NCBI GenBank assembly: GCA_963924565.1
Contig: OZ004611.1
Location: 23,808,001 to 23,872,000 of the forward strand
Length of the DNA: 64,000 nucleotides
Direction: 5' to 3'
Source: Ascidiella aspersa
Lineage: Eukaryota
In this document: piece by piece, positions 1-9,180 of the stretch
Layout of the letters: every line of letters begins with the position of its first letter
Position numbering within the stretch: position 1 is the first letter of the stretch
The notes under the pieces: model-generated
Seen by the model: the letters and a program-made list of their open reading frames with translations, nothing else
The model's database searches: none
What the model was told of the DNA's origin: nothing
Program-made: the position numbers and the translations under genes

Positions 1-168
1 AAGATTGTTAGAAAGTATTGCGCGAAGCAAATATTGTTTTGTTGGGTTTAAAATTGCGACAAAATAATTAGTCGAAAACGCAAAGAAAATTTGTTTACTG
101 GTATGGCGTTTTGGCAAACATTTTTCACTGGAACGCCAATCCGAATTTATTTCTCTCCTGGTACATAC

Positions 169-3100
169 CCTCAAATGGAAATCGAATGACAGTCGATGGG
201 TCGAAGCGATTCGGGTAACTAAAAGCTTGGTTGTTTTTCGGCATCGCAAACCTGAGTTTTTCCTTCATTCCTCTTCGAAATAAAATATTCTGAACTACAA
301 AAATTATATTTGCTAGGGCAAAACAGTGGAAAAGAAAAGTAATACATTTGGGTGTCGCAAACTTTTCAAAAGATTGACCTATTTCGAAACACGTAAACTA
401 AAAGTAATATTATTGTATCGTTCGCCAATATACACGTGCGGCCGTGCGCGATTGTAAAATCGATAAACTTTTTTATCTCTAAGTTCTTGAAAGAAAGAAT
501 TATGTCAAACCTTGACTTTCTGTAATTTATAAGATCATTTGGATACGAATTATTAAGTCATTTGGTGTTAATTCAGTATTTAAATACAGGTAATAACGTT
601 GTCAAATTTTGAAAGGGATAGTGAAAATCCATTATGCTTTTCTCGTGGTTAGCGTCAACATAAAGATTTAAACCTTGACAAAATAAAACTGCGAAAACAC
701 ATATTCATTTTAGTTCTCAGGTTAATGTTGTGGCAATCAAACAAACAAAGATAACATACATTGCTATTTGTACTGTTTTTAACAAAATTTACCAAGTGCG
801 ATTATTTAACTGGGTGGCGTACCCTATACACTTTAGTGACAGCTTACCTGAACAGCTGAACTGGCGGTCTTGTGAGTTTTCAAGAATACGAGATTTTTCT
901 TGGGCATCCGGCGTCTTCTTACGAGGTCCGCTGCCCCTCTACAGAGTTGAACATATTACCCGTTAATTGGTGTTTGTCGCATTCGAATTTTGCAACGAAA
1001 CTGATGAACAATTAAGCAAATGTATTGTATTAATTTATCGCTATTATACAACTGAAGGCAATTTTTGTTTTTTCCAAGCGCGATTCTTGCGAAACCCAAT
1101 ATTTTTATTGCCTGGTGCAGAACAAAATTTTCGAGGAAGAAAATTTGTTGTTTTTAGACTGAATGTCTTATCTAAGAATTTCATAGTTAACCAGTAAATT
1201 ATCGTGAAAACCATATTAAGAGCAGTGCAAGATTCCAGTTACAGATCCACGCATGTTTTGGTTTGCTTTAATTGTTTTACCTTACCAGCTCCGCTTCATA
1301 GAAGTCGACAGAGACTACCCAACCGGTGACATCACGTCTTGCGCGGTCCTTCCATATCACGTGACGTGCCAACTCACCAAATTCTGAATCGACGGTGGCG
1401 ATTTTCTTTAAGTCGATTAAGTGGCCGTTCACAAATTCTAAGCTTAACTTCGACAGATGTGTATGGACGTTTCTAAGAAAAATCAAGTTTAGCATGCAAT
1501 TGATCACATAACTGCAGTGTTCTGGGCTTTGTATTAAGTGGTTTTATATCAGGGTTTCTTAAACATTTTGTTTCCCGTCCCTTCTAGTTCGCGGTTGACC
1601 TAATACCTTTTACAATCACTAATCCATTTAGTTCAAAATATTGTCTGTATGATGCAAAAGGCGATATATAGCTAGGGTTTCCATAATAACTTAAACACCG
1701 CAAAGAATATAGTAGCGAATAATGCAAAATACGGTTGGTTTGGTATCTGTTGTTTTTTAGGTAAACGTTAGATTGGCAATATAATATATAAAATACAGAA
1801 CGCGCGATAGAGTACTGTTCATAGGTTTGAGTTCAGTGTTGCTTAAAACTTATGTGAGTGCCTATTCAGCCACACATTAAAATGTCCAATGTGTGTAGTT
1901 GATGCTGCCATGCAGGGCCGCCTAAAACGCCAAAGGGGCTCCAGCAATAAGACCCAAATAAATTAAGCACATTTGGGAATAAAACCAGAATATGACTAAC
2001 AGCTAGGAAGCAGGTCGAAATAGGGATAATACTTAAACTGGTCAAAATAAAAACCTTATACCCTCTATAAGTCTCCCCCAATTTAAGAACCCTTGCTTTT
2101 AGTTTTTTTTAACTTATATTTGGTTATTTTTGAGTGTTATATATATATGTATAAAATCCTATAATTTCAAAAACCATTAACTGTTTTACTAACTCTGTGG
2201 TAAGGACGGCTCCCCAAATGTTTCCGCTGATTCCTCGAAGAATCGGTGTCCACTTTTTAGGGTCTTCAGAAATTTTATCGTCTACTACGATGATTTCTGC
2301 TGGAAATTCTACTTTCGGTCTGCAAATAGATTAGGGCAGTGCTTCTTAACCCATGGGCAGTGACCCAAAACTATGGGTGGCCAACAGTTTCCATGGTCAG
2401 ATTTATTAAGATTGGTTCTTAGCATGATTTCTGCGAAATTTGAGAAAATTGCAGTAGATATACGAAGAAATGGACTATAATATTAAATTCAAACTTAATA
2501 ATGATTATTGGTGTTTCATGTTGTGTTCGCTTGCAAAACGTTTGGTGAAATATTTGCGTTACCAAAGATTCTCTGTTATACTTGCGTTAGCATTAGGGCC
2601 GTCCCGAAAAAAAAAGAATAAAAAGAAAGGTGAAACCGTGCTTCCTATATTATTGTGGCTTAGTCGTTATAGTTTTAAATGATAGAGTGGAAATCAGTAC
2701 TCTCCAAATACCTTCCATTCTTGCATTGAAACAGCCAACGTTCTAATATCAGAGAGTTTCTTCGCGCCAAAATAATTCCCATGCCTGTAAAATAAACATG
2801 TAGATAGACAAAAGTGTTTTCTAGAATGTTTAAAAAAACAATTTTTTGTAGAGAAGTGTAATAATATTGTTAAAAAGATTATGTTCAAGCAAAAGTGAAC
2901 GAATTCGAATGCTAAACTTATTCAAAGGCTATGGAAAACTTTCTTCAGTCTTCATTAAACATCCTGACAATAATTCTTTCTCAACCACAAGGCAAACCTT
3001 AAATAGTATTTTACTAGCAGTTATCTAATTTATATAATGAATAGCGTGGTTTAAAAATTTTATTTGTAATGCGCTTATTTTTTAAATTTACAAAATTTTG

Positions 3101-6100
3101 GTGCACAAAAAATCCTTTCAAGCACACTGATGTGCCACGGCACTCAACTTGAAAACCACTGTTAAACAGCAATAATTTAGCAAGAAATTAGAACGGTTGA
3201 AATGTGCAAAAAAATGGTCATTTACAAACCGACTGTCGTTGTCACTACGCTCATTTCGGCGTTTCTGTATTTCTCCAAGTTTTCAAAAATCACCACGTCG
3301 TTGCTGTATGCAATTCCACCGACTTCAACAAGAATTTCCAATCTAGCAATGAGAATTAGGTGTTGAAGGTCCTGAAATGGAACCAAAATCAGCTCGCTCC
3401 AGATTAAGGGGATATGAATATAAATAAAACTATAAATTTGGCAACACAATAATTTCACACATATTATTTTTCTGGCTTGCAAACGTTAAGCTTAGTGCGG
3501 TTGAAACATGTCCAAGCAGCTATAACAAAAATTCCGTTTATTATGGCCGCGTAAAGGTGTATTAAATTAAAAAGAATCGCAGCCTAAACCGTTTCGTAGC
3601 CCTGCTTTAGAATCAGGTCGCCTTTACGCATTTATTGCTTATGCTGAACTTGTAGTTAAACCTTGAAATATTTTTTTACCATAACCTGTTTGTTTAACTC
3701 TAGAAAATACTATTCTGACTAAAAAAATACTTTTTTAATTTAAAAAAAAGTCCTCCTTTAAAAATTATCTATTTGTTAAATAGCAAGTTACTATGTTTAA
3801 ACTTAAAGAAAGCTAACACCGAACTATATTTAGCTTAACTCTTACCTCGTAACTGGTCGGTGGCATTCTTTCTACAATCCTTAACTGGTCACGGGCAATC
3901 TGCTTTAGTGCAAACCAAAAATATCCTTTAGGTTCGCAATCGGTGTGAAAGAGCATGACGCGTGGTTTCTGATATCTCAAGACTGACAGAAACCTGAAAA
4001 AAAAAATTCTTTTGCTATCCACCGGTCCGACATTCGTTATTTGAGAAAAAAAGCCCAATGTTCATTATTGTAAAGCATTGACTTTCGATGTACTGCGATG
4101 ACTTTTGGCGTACTAATGAAAGGTAAGCCGTAATTGTTGGTCAAAAAGGAGCTTCAGAAGGGCTAGATCTCAGTTATTGAACACATATGTGTGTGTATCT
4201 TATGCTAAACGTTTATTGATGTTCTCATTTTTTAAAGCTTTACTTAAATCGATAACATCTTTGTAATGTGGCTTTTGTCTTGTAAATATAGCTAAAACTT
4301 TTCACGCAAACAAAATTGATGCATTGTACGGCTGAACGTTAATTTTTATGAAGTCACGTTTGTACGTAACTAATTGAGGTCACGTTTTGACGTAACTTTT
4401 AACGACATCTCTTTAAATAATATTCTTGGTCTTTAAACAAACACCTTGCATCATCCCGTGCTAGATAGATTAAACGGAACTTTATAGTTTTTAGTACGTG
4501 CTTTGGTAAACTTTCGCAATTGCCTAGCCGGGATACCATAATGTATTTTAAACAGTTTAAACAGCATTGGCTAACCTGGTATGAGCGTTTATCATGTTTG
4601 AGATGTCTTATGTCTAATCATAAACACTTACTTATTAGGAGAACAGCTCTAAATGTAAAAACACATCCCCTAAGAACGAAAACGATCAAAAAATAACATA
4701 TTTGCAGTTTTCTGGTTAAATGGCAGGATTTTGTTGCAAAATTTAACGGAGTTTTATATTAATGGTTGAATGCTTATTTGCCGCTGTCATGCAATGCAGT
4801 CGAACTATTTATTTTAATTGTAGTATTTCTTGTTTTAAGTTTATTTTTCGTTATACTAGTTGCTATAACATTAATGGTTTGAAATATTTCGTTATACGTT
4901 TAATTCTTTCGCAATCAGGACCAAAACTATACCTTTTAAAGCATATTTAAAACAAACATGAAAGAAAACTTACGCCATGTAGTTTTGCGCACTAAAGGGC
5001 ACACAACCAAATAGGACGAAGTGGCAAATGTTCGGGACCCTCGTCTGTTCGTCCACCAGCTCTACCGCCACCTCGTGGATCTAATTAAATATAATCATTC
5101 GGCATTTTGCAAATTAATAACGCCCCCTATTCCACGAAGTGTGCCCTGATGATCCAATGGTAGGGTTGCAAACGAGTATCTTTACATTGAGTCAAGTTCC
5201 AGTGAAGTCATTCTCAACAACCAAAAATTTCAAGACTTTGTTTACTAATGTCAAGTCCCTGTTCAGGTCATGCTATATCAAATCAATTCCAAGTCAAGTC
5301 CGTATAGCTGAAATAAATATTTTCATTAAAAAAATTGGTGAATTATTCCATATCTAGTATTATTTCACCTTAAGCAACAAAAAACTAAGTAGCAAAAAAA
5401 GAAAAAAACTCCTCGTAACAAAATTGTATTTAACTTGAACACTTAAATTTATTTTACGTCTTTTGCCAATTGACTGAGTTTCAAGTCATGTTAAGTTAAG
5501 TAACTATACCGGAAATACTTCAGTTTAGTCATTAAATTATAATGAATTTACTGCACTTTTAAGCATTAAAGTTTAAATCATTACAACACTGTCAAACGGA
5601 ATGCAATATTGTTGTTTCTTCTTGTGGTCTGAAGGTTCAATCTGTTTATAGCTGTCGCACCAATATCATTTTATTTAGCCTATCAGTTTATTAATTATGA
5701 CCGGTAGACAAACTCATAATGATAACAGGTTGAGTGTCCTGTAGGTCTAAAGTTTACGCGACGTTTTTTGTTTTGCATAGTAAAATGCCGCTTAGCTACT
5801 CTGCATTAAACATTGAAACTTCGACATGTGCTTGTAACCCACTGTAAATCAATCCAAAAAATTCGCCAGATAGGAAACATACAACTGAATACTAACGTGG
5901 CTTATATATTACATATTTACTGAAACAAAGAGTTAAGCCTGATATAGCCCGTCAACTGTAAATTATTATTGATATATATTTATGTCGGTATTTGTGGCCT
6001 AAATTGGTTTCTTAACCTTATCTTCCGGCGACTAGAATCCAAAAGACTGGTTTACACTAGACGCGTTAACGTCTAGCGTTAGCGTCTGGCGTCTAACGGC

Positions 6101-7816
6101 TAACGTCGTCCAGTTCACACATAACGCGTTGCCAGCGTTAACGGCAAATTTTCTCGCTTCTAACCGAAAGCGTCAAAGTTGAAATCTTTCAACTTTAACG
6201 CAACCGAAAGCGTTTTTTAAAACGTTTTACGTTAACGCTAGACGCGTCTAGTGTGAACCAGCCTTAAGAGTAAATAAAACAGCTAAGCCTTGGCGACACG
6301 ATTCTCAACAGTGTTTTTGTAAGCGAACAAACCACATAGCATTTGCACAAATAAGTTGGAATTTAATTAATATTAGCCATGTCTAACTTTTACTATTTTA
6401 ATTTTGAAGAAATCTTTCTCAAAACCAATATCAATAAATCGAAATATATACTAAGGTAGCTGACCCAAAAAATCAAACGGCGGTCAATTTCGGGCCACGA
6501 CCTAAAGGTTGCGAAACACTGATCTTAATTACCTTATTTCCAGCCACAGCAGTTAGGCCGCCTTGGACCAAATTTGTGTAAGTCAGCCAAAGGTCCACAG
6601 TTAGAGTACTTCAAATTGAAATTTAATGCACAAAATAAATTGTATACCATTTAAAAATTTTAACAAGAAAAAAGATTCAGGTATTTCACTTTTTTACAAG
6701 GATTGGATATCTGTAAGCATTGGCTATCGCGGGTCAAATAGAAAATTTTGCGTCAAACTTCAATTAATTAATTAATTATCATTAAATGAGGAAAGTATAA
6801 ATAACTATTTTTACAACCTGTTTGGTAAATAAATAGTCTCATTTTAAAATTCCGTGAAAATTAAGTTTGAAATCGCATCCGACAATATTTCTCTATATAT
6901 ATCTTATGAGGAAAGTATTTAGTTGGGCTTATGGAATTAGCTCGGCGATCTTTGTGTCTATAAAATTCAGTAACCTTACATCTTCCAGGACATTAAAGCC
7001 AGGTTGGTTCTCCTCTTCTTCTTGAATGGTCGTTTCTACTTTAACTTGCATTCGAGGGATTTTATGATATTTCTGAAACATTAAAGATATACCACTGATG
7101 GCAGTATTATCTAGTTTAAAATCAATTGCATTGACAACAAATAATAAAACCAAAAAAGTAAATGAAGTGTATTTACATAGTGAGTTAGATAAAAATATAA
7201 TTTACTGTGTCTGAAGCATTAAACGCGTCATAATAACTGTTATACATCAAGAATAAGCCCTTTTATTGTCGGACGCGTGCCAAATGTGGCAGGCGGCCTA
7301 ATAAAAAATGGCACGCAAGCCCCCCTAAAAACTTAATTTGTTATTCAGCCAATTGTCAAAAAATACTTAATATTTTGTACAGTAAATTGTCATTGTTTAT
7401 TCACAATATAAAACAATCGCGGCAATCACGACAACTAACAATTAGTTCTAATATACTAACATTACATTGTAGTGGAGTCTATAGCATTTACATAATCATT
7501 AAGTTTGGTGTGAAGAAACAAGAAGCAAAAGTCGGTCACCGATGGACGCTTAGATGCAGTAATACGCATTTCTACAACACGTTTTTATTGTTTGTAAAAA
7601 AACGCTTTTATTATTAGAAAGAATTAGTTACTAAACTTTGGCACGGGAAGAAGTTATAGGATAAAAATTGGAACGTCGGCATGTTTGAGTTGGACACCCC
7701 ATATTTAAACAGAAACTCACCTCAAAGTCCTTTTCACGATAAGTAGCGGTGAAATACGTACTAGCAGCAAGGAACAAAATCACGATCCACAGCATGATCA
7801 GTTTTGACCGAAACAT
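169..7816 (-). CDS. Type II membrane GT32-like (A4GALT/A4GNT family, degenerate) glycosyltransferase fused to galactose-3-O-sulfotransferase; 3' end lies beyond the left edge of the window
   Basis: Phase-consistent GT-AG exons: 7816-7721, 7072-6980, (optional 6608-6533), 5080-4974, 3993-3846, 3371-3230, 2784-2712, 2319-2194, 1472-1281, 938-848, 289-169. The translation begins MFRSKLIMLWIVILFLAASTYF (signal anchor). GT32-like motifs follow: VPNICHFVLFG, FHTDCEPKGYFW, ARLEILVEVGGIAYSNDVV, GIILARRNSLILERWL, DSEFGELARHV. It then reads NLVFLKTHKTASSAVQNILFRRG...FAMP...FSYP, the GAL3ST 5'-PAPS-binding signature. Confidence 0.8.
6045..6263. mobile_element. PIF/Harbinger-like MITE (palindromic)
   Basis: Terminal inverted repeats (TIRs) GACTGGTTTACACTAGACGCG / CGCGTCTAGTGTGAACCAGCC. 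The interior is rich in AACG/CGTT repeats and the right flank is TTA. Confidence 0.65.
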
Positions 7817-8454
7817 CTTGCTTTTAATGCTTTTTTGTTCTGCCTTATGACAACCTAGCATTTTCTTAGCTAAGCTTGAATGGGCAATGTTCATTTTGTG
7901 CCTCTTAAACGCTATCTTTGTTGCTTTTCAGTATTGTACTAAAGGTTCACACCATCTTGCTATATCGTCAATGAAACTGCAGTGTAGTCATTGTAATTAA
8001 TCCACAAGTTACCTAAATATTTTAAAGAATCTATCTACCAAAGATAACAGATTTGTAAATATACTCAACACCTTGCAAATAATGACAGTTGCACGAATCT
8101 AATCCAACTTACTTTATAGCGAAGCATGGCTAAACCGTTTTCCATCACGGTTTACGTTCCCACGTTAAACCGTCATGTTTTACGATAATGCAAAGCAATA
8201 CTACTTCCGAGATGCTATGTTAACAAAGTTCCAGTTGCAGCCTTTGTCATAACTATTTCTAAAGGGCCGAATATGAACGACAAATGTAAACAATGTAACG
8301 TTTAAACCAGTGGTGCATTTTTTATTCAAGGCACCATTCACCAAAGACAACTATATAGATTGCGGCACACTTACATGCCTTTTTACTAAGTGACCACTGT
8401 AATGCAGGGGTTCACAACTTTTTTGTAGTCGCAACCCCTCTTTCCAGTTTTCGA

Positions 8455-8872
8455 CAGTAATGTAAACAAGCCATTTTAAGACTTAAGTCTAATTCAAGTC
8501 ATTTTTAAAAACAACATAAGTCAGAGGCTTTTGGGGTAAATAAGTCAAGTCATAATTAGAGCAAGTATATTTAAAGTCAAGTCCTTGTCAGTAAAAATTA
8601 ACGGTAAACTATTAAATTTGGTATACTCTTCCGATTATGAGCGATAACTCAACTAAAAAATGACTCAAAACGCAACATTTAGTGGCAAGCTTATTGTTTT
8701 TCATGCATAAATTGAGATAAAATACCAAATTTTACAAAAATAACTATTCATGAAAACACTTCATTTCAACTCAAGTCATTTGTCCAACAAACTTAAATCA
8801 AGTCAAGTCCTTTGAAAACAGTGATTTAAGCGCACTTAGATCAAGTCATTGACGTAGGTCATTACAACACTG
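8455..8872. repeat. Copy of an AAGTCA/TGACTT-rich dispersed non-autonomous DNA transposon family
   Basis: Many AAGTCA motifs and a ...TTACAACACTG terminus. Similar copies lie at about 5190-5590, 13400-13570, 16937-17403, 25700-26080 and 59725-59940. Confidence 0.6.
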
Positions 8873-8904
8873 GTTTTTCGAAATCATCCACAAACCCCCA
8901 TATT

Positions 8905-9180
8905 TGTAGGGGTTAGAAATTGGGTTAGGGTTAAAATTATTAAGGTATTTAGTCATGTAGCCTACTTGGAATTTGAGATTAGGTAAAATATTGTATACAG
9001 GCTTGATACTGACCATTTATGTCTTAAATGGTCAGTATCAAGACTTAAACCGACGGCTTTCGGAGTTATTCCTATTTGGACGATTTTTAGTCTTTTAGGT
9101 CAGCCCTATTTTGGTCTTTTTTAAACTATGTTTTTTTTCGACGTTGATGTTGTTATTATTTCGGTCTTATGGCTGGAGTC
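8905..9180 (-). repeat. Dispersed repeat with (AACCCT)-like subrepeats and an internal hairpin (Helentron/HINE-like)
   Basis: Reverse-complement similarity to about 11845-12110 and 27890-28085 (ATAAGACC...AAATAGGACTAA...AACCCCACCC). Perfect 18-bp hairpin CTTGATACTGACCATTTA/TAAATGGTCAGTATCAAG at 9002-9042. The family assignment is tentative. Confidence 0.45.

What the first reader, a model, noticed from the sequence alone, without database searches (positions are those of the whole stretch)
169..7816. GT32 glycosyltransferase-galactose-3-O-sulfotransferase fusion gene: candidate sulfated-galactan (tunic) biosynthesis enzyme
Seen in sequence: the last GT32 exon (1472-1281) ends ...EAELV-AG|gtaaaa (phase 2) and joins, across a 342-nt intron, an exon at 938 that starts in phase 2 and reads RGAADLVRRRRMPKKNLVFLKTHKTASSAVQ, followed by NILFRRG. 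The GAL3ST part has no transmembrane anchor of its own; the only signal anchor is at 7816. Established: the GT32 enzymes A4GALT and A4GNT make alpha-1,4 linkages, GAL3STs 3-O-sulfate galactose, the two are separate genes in vertebrates, and ascidian tunics contain 3-sulfated alpha-1,4-linked L-galactans. I know of no identified biosynthetic enzymes for those galactans. Inference: one Golgi polypeptide couples recognition or elongation of an alpha-1,4 galactan with 3-O-sulfation, matching that chemistry.
Basis: partly seen in the sequence, partly recalled or inferred. Interest (0 to 1): 0.82.

Follow-up and report, generated by a model that had tools for sequence, protein, structure and literature searches.

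The report
Probable GT32-like/GAL3ST fusion gene
In a sea-squirt genome, a well-conserved galactose-3-O-sulfotransferase with no membrane anchor of its own lies 342 bases behind, and in frame with, a glycosyltransferase-like gene that has lost its catalytic motif; the two probably make one Golgi protein, but no RNA evidence could be obtained and the link to tunic galactan is a guess.

Summary
The observed structure is real. On the minus strand, 12 GT-AG exons give one open 684-codon frame. Ten exons are in the window and two lie left of it. The parts are a signal anchor, a GT32-derived domain, a short basic linker and a complete GAL3ST domain.

Three points change the reading.
1. The N-terminal domain belongs to a nine-locus GT32 (PF04488) paralog family in this genome, but it is the most divergent copy. 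It has lost the first Asp of DXD, the preceding Tyr, the upstream Asp and half of a conserved exon. It gives no Pfam hit and is probably not a working transferase. Nothing ties it to A4GALT or A4GNT.
2. The proposed donor overlaps the ancestral stop codon of the GT32 family. An unspliced transcript would therefore end as a normal GT32-like protein.
3. The GAL3ST part keeps 49 of 52 near-invariant family positions, two conserved cysteines and a sequon. It has no anchor exon of its own, whereas three paralogs examined do.

I favour a real fusion in which the dead GT32 domain serves as anchor and stem (about 0.5). The main rival is an ascidian operon mis-joined (about 0.27). No fused relative was found. 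The tunic-galactan role is unsupported.

The parts
7721..7816 (-). Exon 1: start codon at 7816 (in-frame upstream ATGs at 7894 and 7861) and a type II signal anchor, about 7801-7745
   Evidence: It is the only ATG-started hydrophobic segment on this strand between 939 and 14000. The donor is GTGAGT. The exon is predicted from ORF and splice signals only.
6980..7072 (-). Exon 2: acidic stem segment, phase 0 at both ends
   Evidence: Open frame and GT-AG junctions. There is no homology support.
4974..5080 (-). Exon 3: start of the GT32-like domain
   Evidence: tblastn matches the first conserved exon of paralogs L006 and L009.
3846..3993 (-). Exon 4: conserved GT32-family exon
   Evidence: 45-62% identical to ten loci in the same genome.
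3230..3371 (-). Exon 5: degenerate nucleotide-sugar site; SND at 3305-3297 stands where paralogs have D-x-D
   Evidence: Alignment A1. Each paralog exon scores 35-40 bits on PF04488, and the window exon scores nothing.
2712..2784 (-). Exon 6: conserved GT32-family exon
   Evidence: 45-55% identical to the paralog exons.
2194..2319 (-). Exon 7: shortened, strongly diverged counterpart of a conserved paralog exon of about 58 aa
   Evidence: Only a 12-residue stretch aligns. The tryptophan-rich first half of the paralog exon is missing.
1281..1472 (-). Exon 8: last GT32-like exon, with donor AAG|GTAAAA after 1281
   Evidence: 42-56% identical to the last exon of the paralogs. Carries two bases into the next exon.
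1278..1280 (-). TAA that ends the GT32-like frame if the intron is kept; it lies at the family's ancestral stop position
   Evidence: Five paralogs stop at or within four codons of the same aligned position.
939..1280 (-). Intron 8, or the 3' UTR plus intergenic gap if these are two genes: 342 nt, with AATAAA at 1109-1104 and ATTAAA at 1272-1267
   Evidence: It holds no anchor-coding ORF.
848..938 (-). Exon 9: basic linker (four Arg at 919-908, Met at 907-905) and the 5' PAPS-binding loop at 880-857
   Evidence: PF06990 positions 62-83. The acceptor phase equals that of paralog L011.
169..289 (-). Exon 10: the GAL3ST domain continues. Exons 11 and 12 lie left of the window at L002:8909-9431 and L002:8280-8622 (minus strand, stop included)
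   Evidence: PF06990 positions 84-118. The outside exons match positions 125-279 and 292-398. The sequence was read and the model built.

Best explanation
One gene makes one type II Golgi membrane protein of about 684 residues. It has an N-terminal signal anchor, a short acidic stem, a GT32-derived domain that no longer transfers sugar, an 11-17 residue arginine-rich linker and an active GAL3ST domain. That last domain moves sulfate from PAPS to the 3-OH of a galactose on an unknown acceptor.

The likely origin is as follows. A GAL3ST gene lost its own anchor exon, or never brought one, and came to lie behind a GT32 paralog. The last sense codon plus stop of that paralog (AGG TAA) reads as a splice donor. 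Splicing from that donor to the old phase-2 acceptor of the GAL3ST PAPS-loop exon joins the two frames.

The dead GT32 domain now supplies membrane insertion and the stem. It may also supply Golgi retention, pairing or glycan binding. Keeping the intron would give the GT32-like protein alone, so both products may exist.

Shown: the anatomy, the homologies, the motif losses and the conservation of the GAL3ST part. Inferred: the splice itself, loss of transferase activity, the role of the dead domain and the acceptor.
For: The frame is continuous over 12 GT-AG exons.

The GAL3ST part looks like a working lumenal enzyme.
- It covers PF06990 positions 61-398.
- It keeps 49 of 52 positions that are identical in at least 9 of 10 homologs, including the PAPS loop, His407, the N-x-T sequon at 584-586 and Cys617/Cys658.
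- It is only 43-47% identical to its nearest paralog or to Clavelina proteins, so an unused copy should have decayed.

The GAL3ST part has no anchor of its own.
- No anchor or signal ORF with a usable donor lies upstream, except exon 1.
- Paralogs L011, L016 and L017 and the Clavelina proteins each have their own.

The junction and the upstream domain fit a fusion.
- The exon 9 acceptor sits at the same position and phase as in paralog L011.
- The GT32-like copy is the most divergent of its family (44-54% against 45-80% among the others) and has lost catalytic-site residues. That fits a new, non-catalytic job.
- No AATAAA or ATTAAA lies within about 160 nt upstream of the acceptor, unlike abutting Ciona operon junctions.
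Against: The TAA directly after the donor is the family's ancestral stop, and an AATAAA lies 168 nt behind it. A stand-alone GT32-like mRNA is therefore fully possible. Donor GTAAAA lacks the usual G at +5, and a stronger out-of-frame donor GTAAGG sits 5 nt upstream. The first ATG after the acceptor is in frame with the GAL3ST part, so a trans-spliced mRNA could encode an anchorless enzyme. No relative with both domains was seen among 150 representative hits or 32 word-search hits. Operon genes in Ciona are often wrongly predicted as fusions (PMC2760879).
Confidence: 0.5

Rival explanations
1. These are two genes in one ascidian operon or tight tandem. The GT32-like mRNA ends at the TAA (1280-1278) and is polyadenylated inside 1280-939. 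The GAL3ST mRNA starts by spliced-leader trans-splicing at the 938 acceptor and is translated from the Met at 907-905, giving an anchorless enzyme. The in-frame join is a prediction artefact.
For: The ancestral stop codon is intact at the exon end. AATAAA lies 168 nt after the stop, within the range seen behind the paralogs' stops. The first ATG after the acceptor is in frame. About 19-20% of Ciona genes lie in operons, and operon genes are often mis-predicted as fused genes (PMC4122922; PMC2760879). Other first-stage notes list many candidate operons in this genome, none of them checked. No fused relative was found.
Against: The product would lack any signal. Yet it keeps the conserved cysteines and the N-glycosylation sequon typical of the lumenal family. 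Every close relative examined has its own anchor. Ciona operon genes abut with under 100 nt, usually none, between them. Here no canonical poly(A) signal lies within about 160 nt of the acceptor. The 31 nt between the acceptor and the ATG are about 65% G+C in a 33-36% G+C region, which looks coding.
Confidence: 0.27
2. One reading: a bifunctional enzyme in which an active GT32 alpha-1,4 transferase elongates, or specifically recognises, the tunic L-galactan and the GAL3ST domain 3-O-sulfates it.
For: The fused frame exists. Ascidian tunic galactans are 4-linked alpha-L-galactose sulfated at O-3 (PMC3366676). No paper naming the enzymes was found.
Against: The DXD motif and other site residues are lost, and there is no PF04488 hit. 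No Gb3_synth signal was found. This is one of many GAL3ST loci in the genome. Characterised GAL3STs act on beta-D-galactose termini, not on internal alpha-L-galactose (own knowledge). There are no expression data.
Confidence: 0.06
3. A decaying locus: the GAL3ST part is a 5'-truncated duplicate that is not translated, or the GT32-like part is a pseudogene, and the open frames are leftovers.
For: The GT32-like copy has lost site residues, a sequon and a cysteine. The GAL3ST part has lost one conserved cysteine pair.
Against: There is not one stop or frameshift in 684 codons over 12 exons. 49 of 52 near-invariant GAL3ST positions are kept, despite less than 50% identity to any relative. The cysteine pair is lost as a pair, as in stand-alone homolog P0004.
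Confidence: 0.08

Closest known systems
Stand-alone tunicate GAL3ST-like proteins (Clavelina lepadiformis P0001, P0151, P0152; Ciona P0157) and vertebrate GAL3ST1-4
   Same: The catalytic domain is the same PF06990 family. It is 44-46% identical to the Clavelina proteins over residues 339-677, with the PAPS loop and nearly all invariant positions kept.
   Different: Those proteins are about 400-450 residues long, with their own N-terminal anchor and a short stem. This one has no anchor exon and sits behind a GT32-like domain. It has also lost one conserved cysteine pair.
GT32 glycosyltransferases (Pfam PF04488 Gly_transf_sug; for example Och1-type alpha-1,6-mannosyltransferase, A4GALT/A4GNT)
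   Same: There is exon-by-exon homology to nine loci in the same genome whose motif exon passes PF04488. The motif region of those paralogs aligns, weakly (E about 1), to the nucleotide-sugar site of solved GT32/GT44-type enzymes.
   Different: The window copy gives no Pfam hit. It has SND in place of D-x-D, has lost the upstream Asp and the Tyr, and lacks half of a conserved exon. It shows no Gb3_synth signal.
Two-domain Golgi enzymes and dead-enzyme helpers (NDST deacetylase/sulfotransferase; Cosmc, a degenerate GT31 chaperone; lectin domains of ppGalNAc-transferases); from my own knowledge, not tested here
   Same: The idea is the same: a Golgi sugar-modifying enzyme carrying a second domain, sometimes an inactive one, that helps folding, targeting or substrate capture.
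   Different: None of them pairs a GT32-type domain with a GAL3ST domain, and no sequence relationship is claimed.
Ciona-type SL trans-spliced operons
   Same: Two same-strand coding units lie a few hundred bases apart, with an acceptor ahead of an in-frame ATG.
   Different: The gap from stop to acceptor is 339 nt, with no canonical poly(A) signal close to the acceptor, and the downstream unit lacks a signal. Typical Ciona operon genes abut directly and are complete.

Membership tests
GAL3ST (Pfam PF06990) | Match to the family profile over the catalytic domain | tested here: met
   Four exons cover profile positions 61-398 of 402. The two large exons score 120 and 56 bits against a cut-off of 27.
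GAL3ST (Pfam PF06990) | PAPS-binding loop and the family's near-invariant residues | tested here: met
   49 of 52 positions that are identical in at least 9 of 10 homologs are kept, including the KTHKTA loop, His407 and the R-x-P..FES block.
GAL3ST (Pfam PF06990) | Own N-terminal type II signal anchor | tested here: not met
   There is no anchor ORF with a phase-2 donor between 939 and 14000 other than GT32-like exon 1. Paralogs and the Clavelina proteins have one.
GAL3ST (Pfam PF06990) | 3-O-sulfation of galactose | not testable with these tools
   This needs an enzyme assay.
GT32 (Pfam PF04488) | Profile match of the DXD-containing region | tested here: not met
   The window exon gives no hit at E up to 10. 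Five paralog exons score 35-40 bits.
GT32 (Pfam PF04488) | Common descent with GT32 genes | tested here: met
   Exons 3, 4, 5, 6 and 8 match the corresponding exons of PF04488-positive loci at 42-62% identity, in the same order.
GT32 (Pfam PF04488) | D-x-D motif with the upstream Asp/Arg and the Tyr of the nucleotide-sugar site | tested here: not met
   In alignment A1 the window has Ser for the first Asp, Ala for the Tyr and Leu for the upstream Asp. Only the Arg and the second Asp remain. That these residues are needed for activity is my own knowledge from the related clostridial glucosyltransferase domain.
A4GALT/A4GNT subfamily | C-terminal Gb3_synth region (PF04572) | tested here: inconclusive
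   There is no match anywhere in the genome at E up to 1, and none in the control genomes. The search works exon by exon and may be blind here.
Ciona-type operon | Genes abutting, or less than 100 nt apart, with the poly(A) site at the acceptor | tested here: not met
   The stop-to-acceptor distance is 339 nt. The nearest AATAAA is about 170 nt upstream of the acceptor. The criterion is taken from PMC2760879.
Ciona-type operon | Spliced leader on the downstream mRNA | not testable with these tools

The most novel reading that the evidence does not exclude
A Golgi galactose-3-O-sulfotransferase has captured a catalytically dead GT32 domain and uses it as a built-in glycan-holding module. This lets it sulfate a long galactan, such as the 3-sulfated alpha-1,4 L-galactan of the tunic, along the chain. 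It would be the first identified enzyme of that pathway and a new way of building a polysaccharide sulfotransferase.
Probability: 0.07. Interest if true: 0.8.

Novelty: new variant of a known kind. Interest (0 to 1): 0.42.

Why it matters
If the splice is real, this shows how a gene fusion can arise. A stop codon that doubles as a splice donor lets a downstream gene that has lost its anchor exon borrow the anchor of its neighbour, while the neighbour's own catalytic site decays. It would also add a domain combination (GT32-like plus GAL3ST) that I found in none of the relatives retrieved. It would give one concrete, testable candidate among the many GAL3ST genes of an ascidian for work on sulfated glycans. 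If it is an operon instead, the locus is ordinary apart from an odd anchorless GAL3ST.

Tried and rejected
- **Context in other species.**
I therefore could not inspect the contigs that carry P0115 and P0133, the fragments that appear to share the exon 11/12 intron position.
  - The metagenome scan gave only two short, distant contigs.
- **Joined protein.** The joined 684-residue model has no reference and was not sent to any search, family or fold tool. It was built and compared only inside scripts. Pfam and genome searches were done exon by exon. No structure prediction was made, for the same reason.
- **Fused relatives.**
  - Among the 150 best of 1,501 representative hits to the main GAL3ST exon, the 20 I scanned, including the longer ones I picked out, show only PF06990. 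BLAST of the N-terminal 330 residues against all 150 gave nothing below E 3. An apparent extension into P0031 is spurious.
  - The word search with P0001 gave 32 proteins, all PF06990 only.
  - I could not search from the GT32 side, because the exons are too short for the length window of the word search.
- **Conserved donor in the GT32 family.** All copies have GT at the same spot. That follows from a last codon ending in G plus a stop starting with T. Two of five have poor donor contexts, and no shared downstream exon exists within 6-7 kb. I rejected this idea as unproven.
- **Other searches that led nowhere.** The ESM Atlas gave no usable hit. The bacterial promoter/terminator scan is irrelevant here. 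No ORF of 90 aa or more lies on either strand in 1-9000.
Full report
**What is there.**
- The window is G000:C5:23808001-23872000 of a 308-Mb assembly.
- On the minus strand, ten exons between 7816 and 169 form one open frame of 684 codons, with GT-AG at every junction. Two more exons lie left of the window at L002:8909-9431 and L002:8280-8622.
Exon 8 ends at 1281 with two bases carried over, the intron is 342 nt, and exon 9 starts at 938 in the matching phase.
- No ORF of 90 aa or more lies on either strand in 1-9000, so nothing else is hidden in the introns.

**The genome is a tunicate.**
- The best relatives of the sulfotransferase part are named proteins of Clavelina lepadiformis and Ciona.
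- The genome holds a GH6 exon. Among animals that is a tunicate mark; this rests on my own knowledge of the tunicate cellulose synthase.

**The C-terminal half is a good GAL3ST.**
- Pfam PF06990 matches exons 9 and 10 when scanned alone. It matches the two outside exons at 120 and 56 bits. Together they cover profile positions 61-398 of 402.
- I aligned it with ten homologs from tunicates, an echinoderm, a hemichordate and a shark. It keeps 49 of 52 positions that are identical in at least nine of them. These include the PAPS loop, a histidine, an N-x-T sequon and two cysteines.
- One further conserved cysteine pair is lost as a pair, as in stand-alone homolog P0004.
- It is only 43-47% identical to its nearest paralog and to the Clavelina proteins. 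A copy that was not used would not look this clean.

**It has no anchor.**
- The closest full-length relatives are 400-450 residues long, with their own N-terminal hydrophobic anchor.
- Three paralogs in this genome have candidate anchor exons with phase-2 donors upstream of their PAPS-loop exon.
- The PAPS-loop exon of the closest paralog starts at the same intron position and phase as exon 9 here.
- In the window, two scans found no such exon between 939 and 14000 apart from exon 1 at 7816. One scan was strict; the relaxed one covered 939-7700.

**The N-terminal half is GT32-derived but degenerate.**
- Alone, none of its exons hits Pfam, and the genome-wide PF04488 search does not touch the window.
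- Exons 4, 5 and 8 nevertheless find about ten other loci in the genome. These are the same loci whose motif exon passes PF04488.
- Exon order and boundaries agree.
- In the motif exon, six paralogs share His-x-Ala-Asp..Arg and Gly-Gly-x-Tyr-x-Asp-x-Asp. The window copy keeps the His, the Arg, the glycines and the second Asp. It has Leu for the upstream Asp, Ala for the Tyr and Ser for the first Asp (alignment A1).
- The paralog motif aligns, weakly, to the nucleotide-sugar site of solved GT32/GT44-type enzymes. In those enzymes, from my own knowledge, these residues are needed for activity.
- A 58-residue exon conserved at 48-69% among the paralogs survives in the window only as a 12-residue match, with its first half gone.
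- Over 114 shared columns the window copy is the outlier: 44-54% identity against 45-80% among the others. It has also lost a conserved sequon and a cysteine in exon 8.
- The A4GALT-specific Gb3_synth model finds nothing in the genome, though that search may be blind exon by exon.
- I conclude that this domain is a GT32 relative that most likely no longer transfers sugar, and that nothing links it to alpha-1,4 chemistry.

**The junction.**
- Read through, exon 8 ends one codon after the donor in TAA. Five paralogs end at the same aligned position or within four codons of it. The donor AG|GTAA therefore is the last sense codon plus the ancestral stop.
- All copies have GT there. That follows from a codon ending in G before a stop, and no shared downstream exon exists. 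I do not count it as a conserved donor.
- Four splice outcomes are possible from two donors and two main acceptors. Only one gives the long frame.
- An AATAAA lies 168 nt behind the stop, as behind the paralogs' stops. A GT32-like mRNA on its own remains possible.

**Fusion or operon.**
- About a fifth of Ciona genes lie in operons. Operon genes abut without intergenic DNA and are often wrongly predicted as fused genes (PMC4122922; PMC2760879).
- Other first-stage notes list many candidate operons in this genome, unchecked.
- Against an operon here: the downstream unit would start at a Met four residues before the PAPS loop and would have no signal, yet it keeps lumenal hallmarks. No canonical poly(A) signal lies near the acceptor. 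The 31 nt between the acceptor and that ATG are G+C-rich like coding sequence.
- For an operon: the intact stop, the weak +5 position of the donor, and the absence of any fused relative.
- I put the fusion at roughly 0.55-0.6. The full reading, a fusion with a dead GT32 domain acting as anchor and stem, I put at 0.5.

**Search for the architecture elsewhere.**
- A HMMER search of 1.84 billion representatives with the main GAL3ST exon gave 1,501 hits. The best was 50% identical, from a 423-residue stand-alone protein.
- The 20 of the top 150 that I scanned, including the longer ones I picked out, carry only PF06990. None of the 150 resembles the N-terminal half.
- A word search seeded with the Clavelina protein gave 32 proteins, all PF06990 only.
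- Two short fragments, P0115 and P0133, break off where exon 11 ends here. They may be orthologs from other species, but their contigs could not be fetched.
- I found no paper on GAL3ST in tunicates or on a glycosyltransferase-sulfotransferase fusion of this kind.

**Limits.**
- The joined protein was used only inside scripts and was not sent to any search or fold tool. All family and genome searches were done exon by exon.

**The tunic idea.**
- The transferase half looks dead. The GAL3ST family has many loci in this genome (67 exon-level matches). Known GAL3STs act on beta-D-galactose ends (own knowledge).
- I give the tunic reading about 0.06-0.07.

**Verdict.** This is a new variant of known kinds, of moderate interest, pending one RNA experiment.

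Noticed in passing
window 6043-6265: A 223-bp element with 24-nt terminal inverted repeats (92% complementary) sits in intron 2. It looks like a miniature inverted-repeat transposon.
   Followed up: partly
G000:C4:13594003-13813639: A tandem cluster of at least six GAL3ST genes, some of them broken by stops. The family gives 67 exon-level matches genome-wide.
   Followed up: no
G000:C6:4183797-4239960 and G000:C9:20342027-20380756: Tandem clusters of intact-motif GT32 paralogs of the window's N-terminal domain. None lies next to a GAL3ST match.
   Followed up: partly
L005, L007, L010 (last exon of GT32 paralogs): The last codon plus stop reads AG|GTGAGC or AG|GTAAGC, a near-perfect splice donor spanning the stop codon. 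This is the kind of latent site that could let read-through transcripts capture a downstream gene.
   Followed up: partly
window 7894 and 7861: Two in-frame ATGs lie upstream of the 7816 start. They would lengthen the cytoplasmic tail by 26 or 15 residues.
   Followed up: no
window 919-908: Four arginines in a row lie just ahead of the GAL3ST domain. They fit the pattern of a proprotein-convertase site, which in a fusion protein could release a soluble enzyme. This is speculation only.
   Followed up: no
G000:C5:19613851-19614090: An exon matches the GH6 model at 28 bits. It is presumably the GH6-like part of the tunicate cellulose synthase gene.
   Followed up: no
P0115, P0133 (proteins from other assemblies): These GAL3ST fragments, 51% and 41% identical, run into non-homologous sequence exactly where exon 11 ends here. 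That suggests the same intron, and so orthologs in other species.
   Followed up: partly
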